Virus record (IMG/VR): IMGVR_UViG_3300026484_000087
Span: 1-64,000 of that record
Reading direction: 5' to 3' (one strand)
DNA: 64,000 nucleotides
Positions 2,388-12,918 of this stretch are shown here, piece by piece. The notes under the pieces are model-generated. The model was given only the letters and a program-made list of their open reading frames with translations. It did not search any database and was not told the origin of the DNA. The position numbers and the translations under genes were made by a program. Numbering within the stretch: the stretch's first letter is position 1; each line of letters starts with the position of its first letter.

Positions 2388-3029
2388 TTATAGAGTACCG
2401 AAATCAACGTTTATAGAGATAGCGTCAACTCTATCATTAAGTTTTTTAACTTCATCTTCAGTATAGTCTTTTAAATCAGTAATCTTATCATCTAATTCAT
2501 CATTTACTGCATTGATTTTAATAGTTAACTTATCTTTAATATCTTTAGTAGCATTAACTGTAGAATATTCAGATACATTAACTGAAACTTGATAAACTTT
2601 AAATTTATCATTTACTTTATCATATACAGCAGTATATAGTTCATCAGCTTGTAAGAAACCATCAAAATTAGAACCAGTTGCATTAGCAGCATCTTTAGCT
2701 GGTAAAGTGTTAAGTTTAATTTTAAAATCACCTACATTTGCATTTGCAGGAGTGAAGAATACTGTTGTACCCTCTACTAAAGTTTCAATGTTATTTTGTG
2801 TAGATGTTCTAACTAAATGTAGTTCATTTTCTGAACCAATATCTTTATAAAAAACTGATTTAGTTGCAATATCAATAGCTTTAGCTAATTGATTGTTATC
2901 ATTAGCATTTAGCTCAACAGATGTACTAATAGCATTTTTAAGCTCGTTTATGATACTATTCATATCCTCAGCAGTTAAAAAACCTTGTTCAGTTGTAACG
3001 TTATTAATTTTTTCAGCAATATTTTTCAT
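2388..3029 (-). CDS. Putative tail-fibre/tail-associated protein
   Basis: N-terminal LTAEDMNSIINELKNAI...DNNQLAKAI resembles tail-fibre N-termini; FTPANAN module; C-terminal DFG motif. Confidence 0.5.
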   Translation of the reverse strand: MKNIAEKINNVTTEQGFLTAEDMNSIINELKNAISTSVELNANDNNQLAKAIDIATKSVFYKDIGSENELHLVRTSTQNNIETLVEGTTVFFTPANANVGDFKIKLNTLPAKDAANATGSNFDGFLQADELYTAVYDKVNDKFKVYQVSVNVSEYSTVNATKDIKDKLTIKINAVNDELDDKITDLKDYTEDEVKKLNDRVDAISINVDFGTL

Positions 3030-3062
3030 TTTTATGTTTCCTTTTATGTTTTAATTTTAAGA

Positions 3063-4031
3063 TTAGTCTTCATTAGATACGAATTTAATCGGTAAGTCTA
3101 ATGGATAATAAGTTTGTTCATTGTTGCCATTATATGGAATATTATCCCCTGTTGGTAACTCTAAGTCCTCATTGAACGGTTCAACATATGTATATGTCCA
3201 TTCACCTCGTTTACTATTGATTGTAGTTCTTACTCTAAGTACATTAGCAACTCCAGCATTAAGATTATCTTTACTTATGTTAAAGAAACATTCAGTAGTA
3301 GTACCACTCTCAACAACCTCTCCTTCTAAAAGAAATTCCCATTCTAAAGTATCTAAACCTTCCATAAATGGTAACGTTACATATAGATCAACATTAGGTG
3401 GAATAAATTTCATTTTTTCATGTAGAACAATTCTATCATCATTAGATAAATAAAAACTAATTGTACCAAATTGACTAATGTCTCCATTAGAACCTTTATA
3501 TGCTGCATGTACATGGCATACTGTATTTTTTGGTAAATATCTATCCATCAAAACGCTAGTAAGATTATCTTTATCATCTATGCTAGCCCATAAGGCTGTA
3601 CCCTCACTATCTTCAACGATCCATGTAGTAGATTCATGAGTAGCATTACCTAAAGTAGAGAACTCATTACCTATGATTTTAAAGTATGCGTTGGGATGTG
3701 AATCTTTTTCATACTTAGTTGTTAAAGTGGGAGCAGTAATAATGCTAGGAATATCCATATTCAATGCTACTTCATTAGCATCTTTAGGGATAAATACATC
3801 AATATTACTCCACTCTGTAAATCCAGTATTTAACAACATTCTAGCTCTACCGTAGTATTTCTTACCTAGATCTAATTTTTCATTGAAAATTATAGTAGTT
3901 AAATTCTCTTCATCGTCCATAGATTTAACAAGGATGTCTTTAAAACTTTCGTCTGTAGACACTTGCCAGTCTGTTTTATCATGTGTCCATCCCGTAGGTA
4001 AATCTGCATTATTAATTCTTAATACAATCAT
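3063..4031 (-). CDS. Virion structural protein with Ig/FN3-like repeats
   Basis: HDKTDWQVSTDESF and HESTTW repeats typical of jumbo-phage Ig-like virion proteins; start moved to ATG 4031 behind a GGAG RBS. Confidence 0.55.
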   Translation of the reverse strand: MIVLRINNADLPTGWTHDKTDWQVSTDESFKDILVKSMDDEENLTTIIFNEKLDLGKKYYGRARMLLNTGFTEWSNIDVFIPKDANEVALNMDIPSIITAPTLTTKYEKDSHPNAYFKIIGNEFSTLGNATHESTTWIVEDSEGTALWASIDDKDNLTSVLMDRYLPKNTVCHVHAAYKGSNGDISQFGTISFYLSNDDRIVLHEKMKFIPPNVDLYVTLPFMEGLDTLEWEFLLEGEVVESGTTTECFFNISKDNLNAGVANVLRVRTTINSKRGEWTYTYVEPFNEDLELPTGDNIPYNGNNEQTYYPLDLPIKFVSNED

Positions 4032-5675: not shown

Positions 5676-7706
5676 TTATTTTAAAGCATTTAAAACCTCA
5701 TTTGGTTTTAATAGAACATCTAACAAGTGGTCTGGTTTATTAGTATCTGTAAATAAACCTGGCGTCAGTATCTTACCAGATAAGTTATCATAACCATAAC
5801 TAGCACCAGCTGAACGTTTATCTATTACTGTAAGCAACGGAGATAATTGAACGTTTTCACTGTTTCTACCTAAATCATAATTACCATTAGGTAAGTCGTA
5901 TACAGTAAATGCGTATACTACCACTTCAAACAAAGCAATATTAACATCAAGTTTACTATTAACTAAAGTGAATACTTTTGACAATAACGATTCTGGACTA
6001 TCTTTAGATACACCGCCTTTAAGGATGGACATTGTTTTAAACATATCCTTAGTATCTTTAGATAAGGCTAAGAAACTAAATTCAACTTCTGGTAACTTTA
6101 ATATAGGAGTAATAAATTTCCAATTACTCATATCCACTATGTAGTTATCATACTCATCTGCTTCATACCCATTCTCTATAATATAATTAAGGAACTTAAG
6201 TTCAAACACACCATATCTATTACCAAGTCTTATAGGCAATTCATAATGTTCAACATTACCCTTATACTCATACCTAACTATAATAGTCTCTAACCTACTA
6301 ACCCTACCTGGATCAATAATATTTATAGATTTGTCCATCTTTATATCTTTAAGACCAAAACATTCTTCCTGCTTAAAGATAAGCGATACCTTAGCATTCT
6401 TCTTAGCCAGAACTTGAGGTCTTATAACATAACCATTTTTATCTTTAATTACAAAGAACTTCTTAGCATCATCATTAAGCTCTATCGTATTAGATGTAGC
6501 TGATGTAACAAGGTGTTTAGTAGATAAGATAGATTGTGATATTTTAGCATTTATCTCAGTACTACAAAGATGTCCTAAGTTAGAGTGTTTAGGTATAGAA
6601 TATGCTAACTCCCCAAAACACTTAGAGCATATTTGTTTCTTATTAGGTAATTTACATTTTATAGCTGAACGAAGTTTTATTGTTTTACCATATAAATGTT
6701 TCATATCCGTAGTTATAGCTACTAACTCGTTAGTAGTTTCATCTAGATAATACTTACCTTCTAACTTGTTTAAATCACCTTTATAAATAGTTTCACCACT
6801 TACTGATTTCTCTACCGGTTTAACATACCAATCAAGATAGTCAGTGCTACCACAATCCCCAAAAACTATATCCTCAACTACCATAGTAGCCAACTGTAGT
6901 TCTCTACCAAAATATTCAGAATCCTGAATAGCCTTATTAGATAAGAATAATGCTTTTGCACCAGATCTACTATCAGCAGCTAATTCATACATGTTAGCCA
7001 TACCCATGGTAAATGATGAGCTAATAGGATATTTAAAAATAGAACTATCAAGTTCTGTAACATAACCTCTTGGACCAAGAACCTGTTTCATTTGGTTAGC
7101 ATTAACCATACCAGATATATATGCCTTAACAACTGGATTATTTAGAAGATCTTTATCGTTACGCATAATATGATCTAATAGATTATAAGTAACATCAATA
7201 GCATTAACGTTCATTTCATCTGACACTCTGGCCATTGATTTCATTAAATCCTCTTTTAACTGTATATCTAAAAGATCCTTTATATTCATAGACATAACGT
7301 GTTCTGTTATATTATAGCTAAATTCAGAATATAAGGTTTCAACTATCTTATATAAACTATAATATGTATATGCTAATTGTTTATGAACATCTTTACCATT
7401 TACTTTTATAACATTATTAATAAGATCATTTAATATTTCAGATAAAAACTTAGTATGCGATTTACCAGTATACATATCATTAGTGTAAAAGTTACGTATA
7501 TTATATTTTGATACTAATTTAATATCCTTATTAAGATTTGCCATCTCCCAGAAATATCTGGATATAATGACCTCTCTACTGTACATTCTTACACAGATAT
7601 TGTCTTCAAACATAACATTTACATAACCTGTAATATTATTAAGAATATCTAGCGGTTTATAATTTAGAAAATCTCTTACCAATACTGCTGTTTCTTTTTT
7701 ACCCAT
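5676..7706 (-). CDS. Non-virion RNA polymerase beta' C-terminal subunit (phiKZ gp74-like)
   Basis: QVLGPRG, DCGS, LRSAIKC...ICSKCFG zinc site, SQSILSTKH trigger-loop-like motif. Confidence 0.88.
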   Translation of the reverse strand: MGKKETAVLVRDFLNYKPLDILNNITGYVNVMFEDNICVRMYSREVIISRYFWEMANLNKDIKLVSKYNIRNFYTNDMYTGKSHTKFLSEILNDLINNVIKVNGKDVHKQLAYTYYSLYKIVETLYSEFSYNITEHVMSMNIKDLLDIQLKEDLMKSMARVSDEMNVNAIDVTYNLLDHIMRNDKDLLNNPVVKAYISGMVNANQMKQVLGPRGYVTELDSSIFKYPISSSFTMGMANMYELAADSRSGAKALFLSNKAIQDSEYFGRELQLATMVVEDIVFGDCGSTDYLDWYVKPVEKSVSGETIYKGDLNKLEGKYYLDETTNELVAITTDMKHLYGKTIKLRSAIKCKLPNKKQICSKCFGELAYSIPKHSNLGHLCSTEINAKISQSILSTKHLVTSATSNTIELNDDAKKFFVIKDKNGYVIRPQVLAKKNAKVSLIFKQEECFGLKDIKMDKSINIIDPGRVSRLETIIVRYEYKGNVEHYELPIRLGNRYGVFELKFLNYIIENGYEADEYDNYIVDMSNWKFITPILKLPEVEFSFLALSKDTKDMFKTMSILKGGVSKDSPESLLSKVFTLVNSKLDVNIALFEVVVYAFTVYDLPNGNYDLGRNSENVQLSPLLTVIDKRSAGASYGYDNLSGKILTPGLFTDTNKPDHLLDVLLKPNEVLNALK

Positions 7707-7840: not shown

Positions 7841-8008
7841 CTAAGTCCATGGTAAGTCATCAAGTGTTTCTTCACAAATATCCATATCCCAGTCACAATC
7901 AAATTCTACATCTGGTTTAAAATCCTTCTTATCAGCCCAGTCTTCACATGCACTAACAAAATCGCTAACGGTATCCTCACTAAATAAATCGCTAAAAAAA
8001 TCAAACAT
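7841..8008 (-). CDS. Unannotated 55-aa highly acidic protein
   Basis: MFDFFSDLFSEDTVSDFVSACEDWADKKDFKPDVEFDCDWDMDICEETLDDLPWT; ATG with AGGA/AGGT RBS right after the upstream stop; hairpin over its stop codon. Confidence 0.7.
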   Translation of the reverse strand: MFDFFSDLFSEDTVSDFVSACEDWADKKDFKPDVEFDCDWDMDICEETLDDLPWT

Positions 8009-8018
8009 TACCTATCCT

Positions 8019-8408
8019 TTATTTAAGTCTAATCATTTTTTTAATGTAATCTTCCATTAAATTATCACTATGAAGATTATTCTCTATAGCTAACCTGTTT
8101 ATGAATCTAAGATAATAATCATTGAATATATCAACATTATTAACTACTATATTGTTTGCATCCATACCATTATTAAGAGTGTTACATATCTCATCTAATG
8201 GCTTAGTTATCTTAACTGAATCAAATCTACAGTCATCCAGGTATATACTTATATCTAAATCATTTATGGTAAGAACATCTAATTTAGTTCTTAATGTTAG
8301 ATCTTTTAACTTCTTTTCTTTTATATCTTTAAATACTGATAATAGAAATTTAAGAGTTCTATCATATGTATAAAATCTTCCATCAAATTCACAACAATAT
8401 TCTTTCAT
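8019..8408 (-). CDS. Hypothetical protein
   Basis: ORF with RBS in an operon. Confidence 0.65.
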   Translation of the reverse strand: MKEYCCEFDGRFYTYDRTLKFLLSVFKDIKEKKLKDLTLRTKLDVLTINDLDISIYLDDCRFDSVKITKPLDEICNTLNNGMDANNIVVNNVDIFNDYYLRFINRLAIENNLHSDNLMEDYIKKMIRLK

Positions 8409-8411
8409 AAC

Positions 8412-9062
8412 CTATCCTTTAATTAAACCATCTCTTTTTAGTATAAAAAGCATTTCTTTTAACTCTACTTCAATATCATTAATTAGATTTAACTTCTTAT
8501 ATTCGTTTGGCTTTGTTTGCTTAAGTGCTACATTGATAGTAGATATTAAGAATAATATCTTTTCATGTACATTCAAACCAGCTACTTTACACTCTATAAA
8601 TCCCTTAAGTATTTTAACTATCTCTTTAAGTCTATCCTCAAATGCTGAGTACGCATTTATTGGCATTGACTCGTTGAGTTTCTTATTATATAACACAGCT
8701 TCTTTTATATCCCTATGGTATTTATAGAATTTACGTATAGTGTAGTTTGGATTAGAATCTACAAACTGATTTATTGGCATATCTATATTTATAACATAAA
8801 ATGTATGATACTTGTACATTTCATAATATATTTTTTCTTTATGTATTTCATAAGTAACCTCAACATTTTCTATTTTAAGATCAGCTGTTTTACCTGTCTT
8901 AATTAAATCTATCATTGGATTATGATTGTTCTCGGTTCTAACATTATTTAGTAAATAGAACTTATTATTAAGAACTATTGTTTTAACTCGCTTAAGATCT
9001 ATATTAGCCAAGTCTAATGTACCCTCAAATTTGTTTTTATTTTTTAAAAATAATAAGCCCAT
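8412..9062 (-). CDS. Hypothetical protein
   Basis: ORF with AAGGA RBS and upstream motif 2. Confidence 0.7.
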   Translation of the reverse strand: MGLLFLKNKNKFEGTLDLANIDLKRVKTIVLNNKFYLLNNVRTENNHNPMIDLIKTGKTADLKIENVEVTYEIHKEKIYYEMYKYHTFYVINIDMPINQFVDSNPNYTIRKFYKYHRDIKEAVLYNKKLNESMPINAYSAFEDRLKEIVKILKGFIECKVAGLNVHEKILFLISTINVALKQTKPNEYKKLNLINDIEVELKEMLFILKRDGLIKG

Positions 9063-9082
9063 TTTTTATATCCTTTTATTTA

Positions 9083-9110
9083 TCATTTAAATATGTTGGC
9101 AAAAAAAAAA
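9083..9110 (-). promoter_or_regulatory. Promoter-like motif 2 (T-tract, CCA-N9-AWTGA)
   Basis: - strand CCAACATATTTAAATGA; same spacing at 20121, 26745, 53942 and 56801. Confidence 0.5.
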
Positions 9111-9257
9111 GATATTAATAATAGTATATGTATGTGGTTTACCACGTACATATACCATACTATTTAAATGCAGTATTACAAGGACGCCTTCTACTTCATT
9201 GCATTTTTTGTTCTTTATACATAGCTTATTACACAGTACCCATTATAAACTTATAGG

Positions 9258-9887
9258 TTAAGCTGCACTTCCATTGCACCTAATCCTATAATACTCTTCA
9301 CATGGAGTTGTTATGCGTATAACAGGATCCCTTACAATGCATCCATCAACATTATCTGTTTTAGTCTTAAATTTACCAAATGGTAAGATGTAATTCAATG
9401 CTTCACTATCAATACATGTCATTTGGAACTTATAAGGCCTAATCTCTTTTGCACAATAAACATCATTCTTATATTTAACTATTAGGGTTTTTAAACCATT
9501 GGCACTTACAGCTAAACTATAAATACATAATGTAGCATTATCATCATATTCTAATAAGAAGTTACGAATGCCATTCTTTTCCATCTCATTAGCGGTTTCC
9601 ATACTTATAGCACAATATACCATTTCAGACATACTGCCCTCAAAGTGTTGATAAAAATCAACGATACATGGATAGCACGGTGGTAGCTTCTCTTTACTAT
9701 TGTCAACCAAACCATGATATTCAAATGGATGATATCCATGCAGTCTTTGAATATAGTTAAAAGCACGCTTAAGCCCCCTCTTATTTCTAATCAAGAGAGA
9801 TTCTAATCGTTGTAGATAATTATCACCATACGTAACGGTTGGACTTGTTAAAGCATTTTGATTACTAATATCTTTTACATTTCTCAT
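9258..9887 (-). CDS. Hypothetical protein
   Basis: 209-aa ORF with AAGGA RBS. Confidence 0.65.
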   Translation of the reverse strand: MRNVKDISNQNALTSPTVTYGDNYLQRLESLLIRNKRGLKRAFNYIQRLHGYHPFEYHGLVDNSKEKLPPCYPCIVDFYQHFEGSMSEMVYCAISMETANEMEKNGIRNFLLEYDDNATLCIYSLAVSANGLKTLIVKYKNDVYCAKEIRPYKFQMTCIDSEALNYILPFGKFKTKTDNVDGCIVRDPVIRITTPCEEYYRIRCNGSAA

Positions 9888-9898
9888 AACTTATCCTT

Positions 9899-10831
9899 TT
9901 ATACATTATGCATGACATCAGTATCTGATTTATGTACCATCTCAATACCAGCACAGTTATATAAACTATTAACTATTTCTAATGCCTTATCTTGTCCATA
10001 TGGAACTTCATCTCTATTTATAACCCTAGGTATATTAGTTGGATTCTCTGCAGTAAGTATGTTTTTATACATATTCTCATGTGCTTTAATAGAGGAACCT
10101 CTATCTTTAAGTTCTGCTAAGAACTCTTCACCAACATAACTTGCATATAGCCTAGACTCGGTTTCAGATAAAACCTTAGTGGCACTGTTTCTCCATGGCA
10201 ATCTATGTTTCTCTGCTTTAGATGTACTTGTAGGTAAACCAAAATGATTTACTTTAGCAGAAGCAGTACTTAACCATGTATCAGCAATCTTAGCCAACAT
10301 CATTATATATAGTGGAGCTATAATTATATCATCTTTAGATTCAACTACACCCTTAACTGTGTTAAATTTAATTTTATCAACAAGAGGTTTAAATCTAGAA
10401 TTATTTAACTCTTCTATAATCTTATAAGCTGGTTTTGAACCAAGTGCGTAATACACATAGAATTCTTTGTCAACTATTTCTTTTAAGATCTCTCTCTTTT
10501 GTGTTAAATTTGTAGCTTTATAAGCACTATACTGTTCTGTACCAACTATTTTTAGATATTCTAATACCGTATTAAATAAGCTATTAACGATATCGGAACT
10601 AAGACCATCTATAGTTGAATCAAGATCATCTAAGTCATCTATATCCATGATGCTATTAGATATCATACGTTTAACTTGTCTAGAAGACTTAGCAATATAT
10701 GCTTCATAAAGTCTACCTATATTCATACGAGAAATAGTAGAGGCTGGATCCGAAATAATATCAGCTCTAGTACCATCTTTATCAACTGGCATATCTTCAT
10801 CTTTTCTAATTTCACATACGATACTTTTTGC
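9899..10831 (-). CDS. nvRNAP beta C-terminal subunit, exon 2 (phiKZ gp73-like)
   Basis: AKSIV...DMPVD...ADIISDPASTISRMNIGRLYE matches RpoB conserved regions; no RBS or ATG of its own. Confidence 0.88.
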   Translation of the reverse strand, partial: AKSIVCEIRKDEDMPVDKDGTRADIISDPASTISRMNIGRLYEAYIAKSSRQVKRMISNSIMDIDDLDDLDSTIDGLSSDIVNSLFNTVLEYLKIVGTEQYSAYKATNLTQKREILKEIVDKEFYVYYALGSKPAYKIIEELNNSRFKPLVDKIKFNTVKGVVESKDDIIIAPLYIMMLAKIADTWLSTASAKVNHFGLPTSTSKAEKHRLPWRNSATKVLSETESRLYASYVGEEFLAELKDRGSSIKAHENMYKNILTAENPTNIPRVINRDEVPYGQDKALEIVNSLYNCAGIEMVHKSDTDVMHNV

Positions 10832-11516
10832 CTTGGTGTTCAAGTGTAACGCTACTTACACCCCGCGACTCTACTCGCTGCTCCTACCATTACAGTGGAG
10901 GACACAGTTTATAAACTGTGAACATTTTGAACCGACCATATCAATCCTCATCCATTGATGAGGCCCTAACGTTTCGGGTCCGCTTGGATCCCTACTCTGG
11001 AGTAACCAGATGGCCTGTGAACACATACTCTCCTTGTATTAAGGATCACTTTCGTGGTTTAAGGTACTTCGCTGCGTCGATTAGAGCCAGGTAATAGAGT
11101 TTTCACTATGCCTACAGTATCCTTCATTACGGTTGTAGGTATTACAGTATGTTTCCACCTGTAAGTAGTATCTATTACTTTTAACAGCTCCTCCCCGCTA
11201 TTAGAAAGGTTTCATATGTACCTCACGATACATACGGGCTATTTTACATTGATTAAAATAAATATTGTTTATATTCTTTGGGAGTTGCATCTCCTGATAA
11301 AGAATTAAGATGACTATGTGGCGTCTGCTGAAACTCTCCGTGTTCAGGGCATATTAAGGCTATATTCTTTTCACCATGTTTGATTTTAGCTCTCTCTATA
11401 AACCTAAGTCTTAACTTTTCTTTCAATTCATTCCTCCTTTCTAAAAATACCAATGCAATAGTACTTTTAATCTTTTTTATTTTAATCTGTAACCTCGTAT
11501 CCATTACAAGGACTTA
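10832..11516 (-). mobile_element. Group I self-splicing intron (IA-like) in the nvRNAP beta gene
   Basis: Exon ends in U (GGT|TAAG), intron ends in G (ACCAAG|GCA). Q-like AATCGACGCAGCGAAG, R-like GTTCACAGGCCATC and S-like GATATGGTCGG, with P7 GGCCAU/AUGGUC. Splicing restores YKLTDLSG-AKSIV. GC-rich island. Confidence 0.88.
11253..11504 (-). pseudogene. Degenerate intron-encoded homing endonuclease remnant (DUF723-like zinc module)
   Basis: FIERAKIKHG...ICPEHGEFQQTPHSHL; no second CxxC and no nuclease domain. Confidence 0.7.
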
Positions 11517-12731
11517 ACCACTAAGATCAGTCAGCTTATACCCTACGCCGGGTAAGTACCTATATTTAATAGTAAACTCTATTCTGTAAATATCCATTGG
11601 ATCATTTCTATAGATCTTCTTAATGTTTCTATCACCTTTTACAATATCAGCATCAGTAATAGCCATTGCGTTGACTAATAGTCTTGTAAACTTAGGACTA
11701 ACTTTGACATTATCATTTCTATATCTTTGTTTATGTTCATCAACTATATTATCGTATACATCAAGTATATCTTTATAATATTGAACTAAAGCTTTAGAAT
11801 ACTTTTTAACTAAACCATCGGTATTACTATAAATCTCTTTTTTACTTTTTGGAGTATGATAAACTTTAATATCTGATACTACTCCTGAACCATCTCTAAC
11901 ATACGTTACCTTATCGAACATAGGATTGAATTCACATATATCTTTAGCACTCATCAATGCTGGGGCTAACTCATCATCATAATCTCTTACGGCAACAATA
12001 GCACCAGACTTATGTATCTTCTCACCTATCTCTGGGAATGGCTTATAATTATCTTTATCGCCATACAGATTTAACATAAAACTATCTGTACCAAACTCAA
12101 CCGTTCTTTTCTCGAAGATCTCTATAGCCATTTTCTCTGCTGTACTCTCAGATATAACTATACCATCCTCAGCTGTTTCATTGATTGTCATCATACAGAT
12201 ATTTAGATTAGCACCAAACTTATATCCATTATTATCACTAACTGCTGGAGATGAAGCCAATACTGTACCCGCCTCAAGTACATCATTGTGTTGAACTTTA
12301 TCAAGTATATCATGATTCCATTTATATCTAAAACCAAAATAGTTATGCATGTTAGAGTTATATGGTAAATCTAGATAGCTAATCTCACCTGTCTTAAGAT
12401 CTTCATAGATAACAATAGCGTCAACCATATGATTAATACTGTTAATATCTATACCATTCTTATATCTAGGTATAATGGAAATTATTCTAGAATCATTAAC
12501 CAGCTTCTTATCAAATGTTTGTCTGCCTAGCTCTCTTTCGATACCAGACTGAATAATCTTCTCATCTCCATTAAGCAATGTTAATGCTTGTGACATATGT
12601 GAGGACAACATAAGTGACCTAGCAGCACTATTATGATTACAAAATGGGTTTACTGCTGTTATACTCGTTAACTCTGGTCTAAGTTTTACTTTAGCAAATG
12701 ATTCTTTTAACGTTATTTTATCACTTTTCAT
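11517..12731 (-). CDS. nvRNAP beta C-terminal subunit, exon 1 (phiKZ gp71-like)
   Basis: NPFCNHNSAARSLMLSSHMSQ, GANLN, EDGIVISES, GYKLTDLSG; start placed at ATG 12731 behind GGAGG. Confidence 0.88.
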
Positions 12732-12918
12732 TATTATCCTCCATTGTACAAGTATCATCGCATATACTTCTTGAATCGATATCCACCAAAATTAGATCTT
12801 TGAACATCATTTTATATTGTCCTTTTGTAGTTATATTCTCATAGATGTCTCGTTCATGCATATATGCAGATAACGTCCATACTAAAGCAATTGCTACTAA
12901 TACTCTTATTGCTTCCAT
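12721..12918 (-). CDS. Small membrane or secreted protein overlapping the start of the beta gene
   Basis: N-terminal hydrophobic segment; AAGGAG RBS; first gene after motif copy 2. Confidence 0.6.
   Translation of the reverse strand: MEAIRVLVAIALVWTLSAYMHERDIYENITTKGQYKMMFKDLILVDIDSRSICDDTCTMEDNNEK

What the first reader, a model, noticed from the sequence alone, without database searches (positions are those of the whole stretch)
10832..11516. Group I intron splits the nvRNAP beta gene inside the conserved K-x4-G-x-K motif
Seen: the ORF track shows two fragments. Removing 10832-11516 joins ...YKLTDLSG to AKSIVCEI..., matching RpoB GDKxxxxHGNKGV. The 5' exon ends in U, the intron begins UAA and ends in G, and Q/R/S-like elements and P7 are present, with extra helices between the P7 strands (IA-like). 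Established: phiKZ gp71/73 is also intron-split. Inference: splicing is required for middle and late transcription.
Basis: partly seen in the sequence, partly recalled or inferred. Interest (0 to 1): 0.6.

Follow-up and report, generated by a model that had tools for sequence, protein, structure and literature searches.

The report
Group I intron in phage RNA-polymerase gene
A 685-base self-splicing-type (group I) intron, carrying only the stump of its homing-endonuclease gene, interrupts the catalytic loop of the non-virion RNA polymerase beta gene of an uncultured hydrothermal-vent jumbo phage; this is a known kind of element, and sister phages in the same vents hold both the intron-less allele and the full-length intron.

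Summary
On the minus strand, exon 1 (11517-12758) ends ...YKLTDLSG followed by TAA. Exon 2 (9899-10831) starts AKSIVCEI. The two exons are collinear with one RNAP-beta family profile and with the solved phiKZ gp71-73 chain.

A 99%-identical (protein) metagenome relative, L100, lacks precisely these 685 nt. A 78-80% relative, L093, has the same intron at the same site, 1720 nt long, with an intact 413-aa endonuclease ORF.

Rfam RF00028 reaches only 25 bits against a threshold of 50. A profile of 43 related phage introns, built without the window, hits it at E=2.5e-25. All core elements (P2-P9, P/Q/R/S, P7.1/P7.2, U at -1, terminal G) are present. The 22 differences from the L093 copy include 5 compensatory pair changes and break no predicted pair.

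The window's 83-aa intron ORF is an in-frame deletion remnant of the endonuclease.

The insertion point lies one codon (3 nt) upstream of the phiKZ/PhiPA3 intron site, which suggests a separate invasion.

No RNA data exist, so splicing is inferred, not shown. This is a new member of a known kind, of moderate interest.

The parts
11517..12758 (-). Exon 1 of the nvRNAP beta (phiKZ gp71-like) gene, 414 codons, ending AGT GGT (…LSG)
   Evidence: PHROG 3295 profile positions 9-402 of 698, E=3.8e-101. PDB 7ogp_C residues 13-392, E=6.8e-53. tblastn matches to 300 phage records.
10832..11516 (-). Group I intron, 685 nt; begins UAAGUCC, ends CACCAAG (terminal G at 10832)
   Evidence: Exactly absent from the intron-less allele L100 and from contigs of runs X4 and X6. 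Same intron at the same site in L093. RF00028 25 bits. Family profile E=2.5e-25.
9899..10831 (-). Exon 2 (phiKZ gp73-like), 310 codons plus stop, starting GCA AAA AGT (AKS…)
   Evidence: PHROG 3295 profile positions 404-695 of 698. Pfam RNA_pol_Rpb2_6, E=7.4e-9. 7ogp_C residues 394-697; K2 aligns with E. coli beta K1073.
11253..11504 (-). 83-codon intron ORF: in-frame deletion remnant of a homing endonuclease. It keeps the N-end, one zinc-finger module piece and the C-end, and has no nuclease domain.
   Evidence: phrog_681, E=1.4e-4, partial match. Its three pieces match the 413-aa ORF of the L093 intron (blastn segments and the two ORF translations). That ORF hits phrog_559/681/9084 and Pfam DUF4379.
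11493..11511 (-). Hairpin just after the 5' splice site (CCUUGUA-AUGGA-UACGAGG). Its loop holds the ORF start codon (AUG here, GUG in L093).
   Evidence: Read from the sequence. One U.G to U-A change between the two copies keeps the stem. A regulatory role is inference.
11237..11241 (-). Proposed internal guide sequence UAGCC. It pairs with GGU|UA to form P1 (5 bp, U.G at the splice site). The ORF lies in the P1 loop.
   Evidence: Lies directly 5' of P2, as in relatives L036 (GGCU|UA / UAGGCC), L021 and L058. Inferred; there is no covariation for this helix.
11213..11236 (-). P2, a 10-bp hairpin with a GUGA loop
   Evidence: Local fold of -10.4 kcal/mol. The equivalent hairpin has a different sequence in the relatives.
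11194..11209 (-). P3 5' strand (CCUUUC), J3/4 (AAU) and P4 5' strand (AGCGGG) = element P
   Evidence: Fixed-offset comparison with 40 family members. P4 pair 1 is A.A here and in L093, against U-A in 40 of 40 others.
11083..11193 (-). P5 with a three-way P5abc-like extension, including a GAAA-capped arm
   Evidence: Local fold. Shares 72-80% identity with L060, L058, L036 and vB_pir03. Three compensatory pair changes and four one-sided pair-keeping changes against L093.
11025..11082 (-). J5/4 and P4 3' strand (AAUCGACGCAGC = element Q) and P6/P6a/P6b
   Evidence: A 16-nt motif shared with 73 IMG/VR loci. P6 pairs covary across the family.
10934..11022 (-). Catalytic 3' half: J6/7 and P7 5' strand (GUUCACAGGCCA = R), P7.1, P7.2, P3 3' strand, P8, J8/7 and P7 3' strand (GAUAUGGUC = S)
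   Evidence: P7 shows U-A to C-G, as in L012 and L024. P8 is a perfect 7-bp hairpin. P7.1 and P7.2 are predicted hairpins.
10838..10933 (-). P9 domain: closing helix GUUCAA/UUGAAC, three to four inner hairpins, then ACCAAG| to the 3' splice site
   Evidence: Local fold of -29 kcal/mol. Helix GCGA/UCGC becomes GCAC/GUGC in L093 and GCAU/AUGC in L060.

Best explanation
Window 10832-11516 (minus strand) is a group I intron with an IA-like layout. It interrupts the gene for the C-terminal half of the beta-like subunit of the phage's non-virion RNA polymerase (the phiKZ gp71-73 homologue). The insertion lies between the codons equivalent to E. coli beta G1071 and N1072, in the loop GxKxxxxxG|xK(G) that lines the active site.

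The primary transcript cannot give a full-length subunit, because the intron opens with UAA. The proposed mechanism is standard group I self-splicing. The intron folds into P1 (GGU|UA with the guide UAGCC), P2 and the P3-P9 core. Guanosine attacks after the U of AGUGGU. The terminal G (10832) then docks, and the exons are joined to give AGUGGU-GCAAAA (…LSG-AKS…), encoding a 724-residue subunit.

The intron once carried a homing endonuclease in the P1 loop. That enzyme had treble-clef zinc-finger repeats and a C-terminal nuclease. In this phage, two in-frame deletions have reduced it to 83 codons, so the intron is probably no longer mobile on its own.

Shown here: the split, the exact boundaries at DNA level, membership of a phage group I intron family, and selection on RNA pairing.

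Inferred: the splicing chemistry, the P1 pairing, and the dependence of middle and late transcription on splicing.
For: (1) Collinearity. The exons hit PHROG 3295 at profile positions 9-402 and 404-695. They hit 7ogp_C at residues 13-392 and 394-697. In intron-less homologues the two matches abut exactly, for example FLC9 at 301923|301922, and likewise RVTF4, D6, PS119XW and RP31.

(2) Intron-less allele. In L100 (98.6% and 99.7% protein identity for the two exons) the exons abut at 417|418. Contigs of runs X4 and X6 skip 694 nt and put 9 nt in their place, a net loss of 685 nt.

(3) Same intron at the same site in L093, with a full endonuclease ORF. The ribozyme part is 95% identical. Of 22 differences, 8 are unpaired, 10 make up 5 compensatory pair changes, 4 keep the pair through a change on one side, and none breaks a pair.

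(4) Family profile. A profile of 43 IMG/VR introns built without the window gives E=2.5e-25. Members of that family score 77-97 bits on RF00028.

(5) Core helices. P3, P6 and P7 covary across 40 members and the window conforms, including the P7 change U-A to C-G.

(6) Splice-site rules. U at -1 and a terminal G.

(7) The same protein loop is occupied by strong group I introns in PA7 (phiKZ-like), PhiPA3, L007, L008 and L015.
Against: RF00028 reaches only 25 bits against a gathering score of 50, and nothing passes at the gathering threshold.

The first P4 pair is A.A where 40 of 40 family members have U-A. P3 has two U.U mismatches. Both oddities are shared with the L093 copy, which carries an intact endonuclease gene.

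P1 has only 5 bp, and I found no convincing P10.

No RNA run holds this phage, so no spliced read exists.

For phiKZ itself, a long-read transcriptome study saw no spliced reads (PMC10914365), although the purified enzyme contains the joined chain.
Confidence: 0.9

Rival explanations
1. The insert is a decayed, no longer splicing intron (or other mobile remnant), and the beta gene of this phage is a pseudogene.
For: Low RF00028 score. A.A at the otherwise invariant first P4 pair and U.U mismatches in P3. The endonuclease is already deleted. The genome is a metagenome assembly estimated 77% complete.
Against: Both exons are intact over 724 codons and 99% identical in protein to the intron-less allele. 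The unusual P3 and P4 features are shared with L093, whose intron keeps a full endonuclease ORF. No substitution between the two copies breaks a predicted pair, and five are compensatory. The subunit carries active-site residues and is single copy (one place per record).
Confidence: 0.04
2. No splicing: the gene is expressed as two separate polypeptides (414 aa and about 314 aa) that assemble, as other jumbo-phage RNAP subunits are naturally split.
For: Jumbo-phage beta and beta' subunits are already divided into several genes (review PMC7598289). An in-frame TTG lies at 10843, 12 nt before the junction.
Against: The TTG lies inside the predicted P9 domain, and its only Shine-Dalgarno-like run (GGGGUG) is about 15 nt upstream. 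The break falls inside the most conserved active-site loop. The close relative L100 and most homologues encode one continuous chain. The insert has a complete ribozyme core under structural selection. Purified phiKZ enzyme holds the joined chain.
Confidence: 0.02
3. It is a group I intron, but the real junction is shifted. For example, exon 1 ends ...AGUGG and exon 2 starts GGCAAA, which gives the same protein.
For: Removing 685 nt one base to the left gives GGG GCA, still Gly-Ala (sequences). DNA comparison cannot separate the two options, because the intron-less allele has GGA there.
Against: That junction would leave an intron ending in A and a 5' exon ending in G. This breaks the U(-1) and terminal-G rules, which the proposed junction meets here and in L093.
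Confidence: 0.03

Closest known systems
phiKZ gp71/gp72/gp73 intron (also in PA7) and the PhiPA3 gene 065 intron, in the nvRNAP beta gene
   Same: Same gene and same catalytic loop. Group I introns with extra helices between P7 and P3'. The 5' exon ends in U and the intron ends in G. The joined chain is seen in the solved enzyme 7OGP. The gp72 intron was predicted by Mesyanzhinov 2002, as cited in PMC10914365.
   Different: The insertion point is 3 nt (one codon) downstream: HGG|KG there, SG|AKS here. Their cores score 79-84 bits on RF00028, against 25 bits here. No DNA similarity to this intron was found by blastn. In PA7 and PhiPA3 the introns are 307 and about 450 nt, and neither record annotates an ORF inside the intron.
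Unannotated intron plus endonuclease in Vibrio phage vB_pir03 (MT811961, about 37.9-39.4 kb), and IMG/VR introns L060, L058, L036
   Same: Same intron lineage: 72-80% identity over the P4-P6 domain. The endonuclease (phrog_559/681/9084) lies 5' of the core in the P1 loop. The host genes are jumbo-phage RNAP subunits.
   Different: They interrupt other RNAP genes. In vB_pir03 it is a phrog_3148 beta-type gene. In L060 and L021 it is a beta'-like gene, right after the DFDGD motif. They have larger P7.1/P7.2 inserts and intact endonucleases.
PhiPA3 gp210 intron endonuclease (Birkholz et al. 2024, PMC11620839; review PMC12908238)
   Same: A mobile group I intron with a homing endonuclease in a jumbo-phage RNAP subunit gene. 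It is the model for why such introns sit in RNAP active sites and can act in phage-phage competition.
   Different: That intron is in a virion RNAP gene and its endonuclease is active. Here the endonuclease is a stump, so no such role is expected in this phage. It may apply to L093.
Classical phage group I introns (T4 td, nrdB, nrdD; SPO1/Bastille DNA polymerase; Twort)
   Same: Self-splicing introns in essential nucleic-acid-metabolism genes at conserved motifs. They often carry an endonuclease ORF looped out of the core, and show a cycle of gain, endonuclease decay and loss (established knowledge; PMC11878797, PMC12908238).
   Different: Different host genes. In T4 the ORFs lie in peripheral loops such as P6 or P9 (from memory), whereas here the ORF lies in the P1 loop.

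Membership tests
Group I intron | Conserved catalytic core: P3-P4-P5-P6 and P7-P3'-P8-P7' in canonical order, with the P/Q/R/S elements | tested here: met
   All elements are present at family-typical spacing. P3, P6 and P7 covary across 40 relatives and the window conforms. A family profile built without the window gives E=2.5e-25.
Group I intron | Operational criterion, not a defining trait: reaches the Rfam RF00028 gathering score (50 bits) | tested here: not met
   25 bits, E=5.8e-4 in a 1.15-kb search; nothing at the gathering threshold. The closest relatives L083, L084 and L085 are also missed. More distant members of the same family score 77-97 bits.
Group I intron | 5' exon ends in U, which pairs with G of an internal guide in P1; the intron ends in G | tested here: met
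   AGUGGU|UAAG… and …CCAAG|GCA. The guide UAGCC lies directly 5' of P2 and gives GGU|UA/UAGCC with a U.G pair. The P1 pairing itself is inferred by analogy with L036, L021 and L058.
Group I intron | Precise removal restores the host reading frame at a conserved site | tested here: met
   The natural intron-less allele L100 and contigs of runs X4 and X6 lack exactly 685 nt. The exons are collinear with 7ogp_C without a gap.
Group I intron | RNA structure under selection (compensatory changes) | tested here: met
   Window versus L093: 5 double compensatory changes, 4 one-sided changes that keep the pair, none that breaks a pair, 8 unpaired. P7 changes U-A to C-G in 3 lineages.
Group I intron | Guanosine-dependent self-splicing, or a spliced RNA in vivo | not testable with these tools
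   No RNA run holds the sequence.
Subgroup IA | Extra helices P7.1/P7.2 between the P7 5' strand and the P3 3' strand | tested here: inconclusive
   A 35-nt insert folds into two hairpins. The P7.1 stem differs between the window, L083 and L036 in a pair-keeping way (read by eye). No subgroup-specific model was available.
Mobile intron with an active homing endonuclease | Intact endonuclease ORF with a nuclease domain | tested here: not met
   Only 83 codons remain, with no nuclease domain. The L093 copy has 413 codons and hits phrog_559, phrog_681, phrog_9084 and Pfam DUF4379.
Jumbo-phage nvRNAP beta, C-terminal half (phiKZ gp71-73) | Full-length collinear homology with the solved subunit, and local gene order | tested here: met
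   7ogp_C at E=6.8e-53 and 1.1e-39. The next best hit is AR9 nvRNAP 7s00_C. A gp74-like gene (phrog_3015) lies downstream at 5679-7706 and phrog_3520 upstream. The upstream CDS in PhiPA3 is annotated gp70-like.

The most novel reading that the evidence does not exclude
At least two unrelated group I intron lineages have invaded adjacent phosphodiester bonds (3 nt apart) of the same active-site loop of the jumbo-phage nvRNAP beta gene. One lineage, with the endonuclease in the P1 loop, moves between active-site motifs of different RNAP subunits: the beta KxxxxxGxK loop, the beta' DFDGD motif, and a vRNAP beta-type gene. The vent population would then capture a full homing cycle: intron with endonuclease in L093, intron with a deleted endonuclease in the window, and an empty site in L100. 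The 5' exon flank appears co-converted (AGT GGT against TCA GGA). RNAP active sites would thus be a recurrent battleground for intron-endonuclease weapons of the PhiPA3 gp210 type.
Probability: 0.5. Interest if true: 0.5.

Novelty: new member of a known kind. Interest (0 to 1): 0.38.

Why it matters
For annotation: the two ORFs must be joined into one essential polymerase subunit, and the standard Rfam model misses this intron lineage. The same lineage is unannotated in the cultured Vibrio phage vB_pir03.

For biology: it adds a natural three-state series (endonuclease-bearing intron, endonuclease-less intron, empty site) in closely related uncultured jumbo phages. It also shows that the beta catalytic loop has been invaded at two neighbouring positions. 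Both points bear on the recent idea that intron endonucleases in jumbo-phage RNAP genes serve in phage-phage competition. It does not open a new kind of system.

Tried and rejected
- Rfam at the gathering threshold over the whole window found nothing.
- megablast of the gene region against GenBank phages found no match. The closest cultured homologue shares only 35% protein identity.
- A search for RNA runs found none, so the spliced junction could not be read.
- RNAalifold on a MAFFT alignment of the 3' catalytic half of 15 relatives recovered only P7, because the variable P7.1/P7.2/P8 inserts misalign. I therefore built no covariance model and counted pairs at fixed offsets from sequence anchors instead.
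- BLASTP of the 83-aa ORF against the intron ORFs of L060 and L058 found no similarity. The true parent ORF turned up in L093.
- I looked for P10 pairing between GCAAAA and the guide region and found nothing convincing.
- An intein is excluded, because the insert begins with a stop codon.
- A tRNA-intron explanation for the tandem cores found in IMG/VR: ARAGORN found no tRNA.
All protein searches were done exon by exon, by reference.

Full report
**What is in the sequence**

The gene lies on the minus strand. ORF 11514..12758 (414 codons) ends …YRYLPGVGYKLTDLSG and then TAA. A second frame is open from 10855 and reads …LNTK AKSIVCEIRKDEDMPVDKDG… down to the stop at 9899-9901. Taking out 10832-11516 (685 nt) joins AGT GGT to GCA AAA in frame. 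The last exon base is U. The insert starts UAAG and ends CCAAG.

**The two pieces are one gene**

- Exon 1 matches PHROG 3295 (RNA polymerase beta subunit, 698 positions) at positions 9-402. Exon 2 matches at positions 404-695.
- Exon 2 also passes Pfam RNA_pol_Rpb2_6.
- Against solved structures, the best hit of both exons is chain C of the phiKZ non-virion RNA polymerase (7OGP, 'PHIKZ071', 700 aa). Exon 1 residues 30-414 align with chain 13-392. Exon 2 residues 2-301 align with chain 394-697. Next comes the AR9 non-virion enzyme.
- K2 of exon 2 aligns with E. coli beta K1073. The break therefore lies between the equivalents of G1071 and N1072 in the GDKxxxxHGNKG active-site loop.
- In many phages the tblastn matches of the two exons abut to the base: FLC9 at 301923|301922, RVTF4 at 120258|120259, and likewise D6, PS119XW and RP31.
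- Downstream lies a complete gp74-like subunit gene (5679-7706, phrog_3015). Upstream lies a phrog_3520 gene. The upstream CDS in PhiPA3 is annotated gp70-like, which fits the phiKZ gene order.

**The boundaries are fixed by natural alleles**

The genome is an IMG/VR virus record of 206,244 nt from a hydrothermal-vent metagenome.

- Laying contigs of four DNA runs on 10300-12100 showed a 1443-nt contig from another vent study (X4, and weakly X6). It covers 10300-10831 and 11526-11968 with nine other letters between them.
- A metagenome scan then returned the sequence itself. In L100 (Ga0256828_1001672), exon 1 (98.6% protein identity) and exon 2 (99.7%) abut at 417|418: …GAT TTA TCA GGA|GCA AAA AGT…. 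What the window has in addition is exactly 10832-11516.
- L093 is a 110-kb contig from the window's own metagenome, 78-80% identical in protein. It has an insert of 1720 nt at the very same point: …AGT GGT|TAAGTCCTTGTAGTGG … CTTGAACATCAAG|GCAAAAAGT.

**The insert is a group I intron**

Rfam's RF00028 finds nothing at its gathering score. In a 1.15-kb search it gives 25 bits, E=5.8e-4, at 10912-11265. That alone is weak, so I looked for relatives.

- The intron shares 72-80% identity over its P4-P6 domain with Vibrio phage vB_pir03 and with IMG/VR loci.
- The 16-mer AATCGACGCAGCGAAG (J5/4-P4'-P6) occurs in 73 IMG/VR loci. Members of this family score 77-97 bits on RF00028.
- An nhmmer profile of 43 members, built without the window, finds the window's intron at E=2.5e-25 in the whole genome.
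- In 40 family members, measured at fixed offsets from sequence anchors, P3, P6 and P7 covary strongly and P4 is invariant.
- The window fits this pattern: P3 is CCUUUC/GUUAGG, P4 is AGCGGG/UC..CGCA, P6 is GUAC/GUAU, and P7 is GGCCA/UGGUC. The P7 change U-A to C-G is also seen in L012 and L024.

**The RNA structure is under selection**

The ribozyme part of L093 is 95% identical to the window's. The 22 differences in intron positions 251-685 break down as follows:

| Class of difference | Count |
|---|---|
| In unpaired positions | 8 nt |
| Compensatory double changes (three in the P5 extension, two in a P9 helix) | 10 nt, in 5 pairs |
| One-sided changes that keep the pair | 4 nt |
| Changes that break a predicted pair | 0 |

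The two features that depress the Rfam score are both shared with L093, whose intron still carries an intact endonuclease gene. These features are A.A at the first P4 pair (U-A in 40 of 40 other members) and two U.U mismatches in P3. They are lineage traits, not assembly errors or private decay.

**P1 and the ORF**

- In relatives the guide sequence sits directly 5' of P2. L036 has GGCU|UA with UAGGCC, L021 has GGAGAU with GUCUCC, and L058 has GGAU|U with AGUCC.
- The window has UAGCC at 11241-11237, directly before P2. This gives a 5-bp P1, GGU|UA/UAGCC, with the U.G pair at the splice site. This helix is inferred. I found no convincing P10.
- The ORF lies in the P1 loop.
- In L093 the ORF has 413 codons. 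It contains four to five treble-clef zinc-finger modules (Pfam DUF4379, DUF723) and a C-terminal nuclease region (phrog_559 'HNH endonuclease', phrog_9084 'homing endonuclease').
- The window's 83-codon ORF keeps the N-end, a piece of one module and the last 17 codons, all in frame. It is a deletion remnant without a nuclease domain.

**Comparison with phiKZ**

- PA7 (a phiKZ-like phage) and PhiPA3 have RF00028 hits of 84 and 79 bits between their gp71-like and gp73-like parts.
- The mature phiKZ chain reads …MTDFHG392 G393 | K394 GVICKV. With U at -1 and a terminal G, that places the phiKZ/PA7 intron between codons 393 and 394.
- The same reasoning places the introns of PhiPA3, L007, L008 and L015 at that position.
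- The window and L093 intron lies between the equivalents of 392 and 393, 3 nt upstream.
- It shows no blastn similarity to the phiKZ-type introns.
- Its nearest relatives sit in other RNAP subunit genes. In L060 and L021 they lie directly after the DFDGD motif of a beta'-like gene. In vB_pir03 the intron lies in a phrog_3148 beta-type gene.
- So the loop is the same but the site and the intron lineage differ. This is most simply explained by an independent invasion.

**Flank signature**

- The nine bases before the junction are CTT AGT GGT in the window and CTC AGT GGT in L093. In the intron-less L100 they are TTA TCA GGA. That is six differences, all synonymous, including a switch of serine codon family.
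- Exon 1 as a whole is 90% identical between the window and L100, and 79% between the window and L093.
- Differences from L100 are denser in the last 73 nt of exon 1 (14 differences). There are none in the first 35 nt of exon 2.
- This fits co-conversion of the 5' flank during homing, or selection for P1 pairing, or both. I cannot separate the two.

**What is not shown**

- No RNA run holds this phage. Splicing, its junction and its necessity for middle and late transcription are therefore inferred, from the anatomy and from phiKZ biology.
- For phiKZ, a long-read transcriptome study reported no spliced reads for the predicted introns (PMC10914365). The purified polymerase nevertheless contains the joined chain.

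**Verdict**

This is a real, precisely bounded group I intron in the nvRNAP beta gene. It is a new, divergent member of a known kind, with a decayed endonuclease. It is notable for the neighbouring insertion site and for the three allelic states found in one habitat.

Noticed in passing
G000 (own genome) about 138,769-139,410, minus strand (L091 about 2769-3410); outside the window: A second split RNAP gene. A 493-aa ORF matches phrog_2986 positions 3-484 and a 63-aa ORF matches positions 481-537. About 640 nt lie between them and hold GUUCAACGACUAUC … GAUAUAGUC. The family profile hits this stretch at E=1e-6, but RF00028 finds nothing. The 5' exon again ends …GAU|UAA.
   Followed up: partly
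L053 6883-9216; L019 401-2390; also L017, L032, L042, L055 (IMGVR_UViG_3300045988_176405 and _176431, about 250-kb contigs): Five or six group I cores (P4 motif, core 16-mer, GATATAGTC) lie in tandem on one strand every 371-484 nt. In most gaps only 77-83 nt separate one P7 3' strand from the next P3. No ORF of 45 aa or more spans them, and ARAGORN finds no tRNA. Either the exons are tiny or this is an array of ribozyme-like repeats. Unexplained.
   Followed up: partly
L005 = Vibrio phage vB_pir03 MT811961, 37,939-39,436: The 'hypothetical protein' QNI20980 is a homing endonuclease (phrog_559/681/9084). It is followed by a group I core (RF00028 45 bits). Together they split a phrog_3148 RNAP beta-type gene that is annotated as separate CDSs. 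This is an unannotated intron in a cultured phage.
   Followed up: partly
L060 9100-9150 and 10560-11053; L021: The nearest relatives of the window's intron sit directly after the D-F-D-G-D catalytic motif of a beta'-like RNAP subunit (phrog_2987). In L060 a 477-aa ORF lies 5' of the core. The L060 contig ends inside the intron.
   Followed up: partly
window 7841-9887, minus strand: Four small ORFs (209, 216, 129 and 55 aa) sit between exon 2 and the gp74-like gene. The three larger ones had no PHROG match; the 55-aa ORF was not searched. In PA7 and PhiPA3 the two genes are adjacent.
   Followed up: partly
window 11032-11305: This stretch of the intron core lies on many short contigs of all four vent and epibiont runs. 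The contigs have unrelated flanks (loose ends such as …CCCCGCAATTA). Introns of this family are therefore common in these habitats.
   Followed up: no
window 11493-11511, minus strand: The remnant ORF's start codon (AUG; GUG in L093) lies in the loop of a 7-bp hairpin placed 5 nt after the 5' splice site. This could be translational control of the endonuclease. One U.G to U-A change keeps the stem.
   Followed up: no
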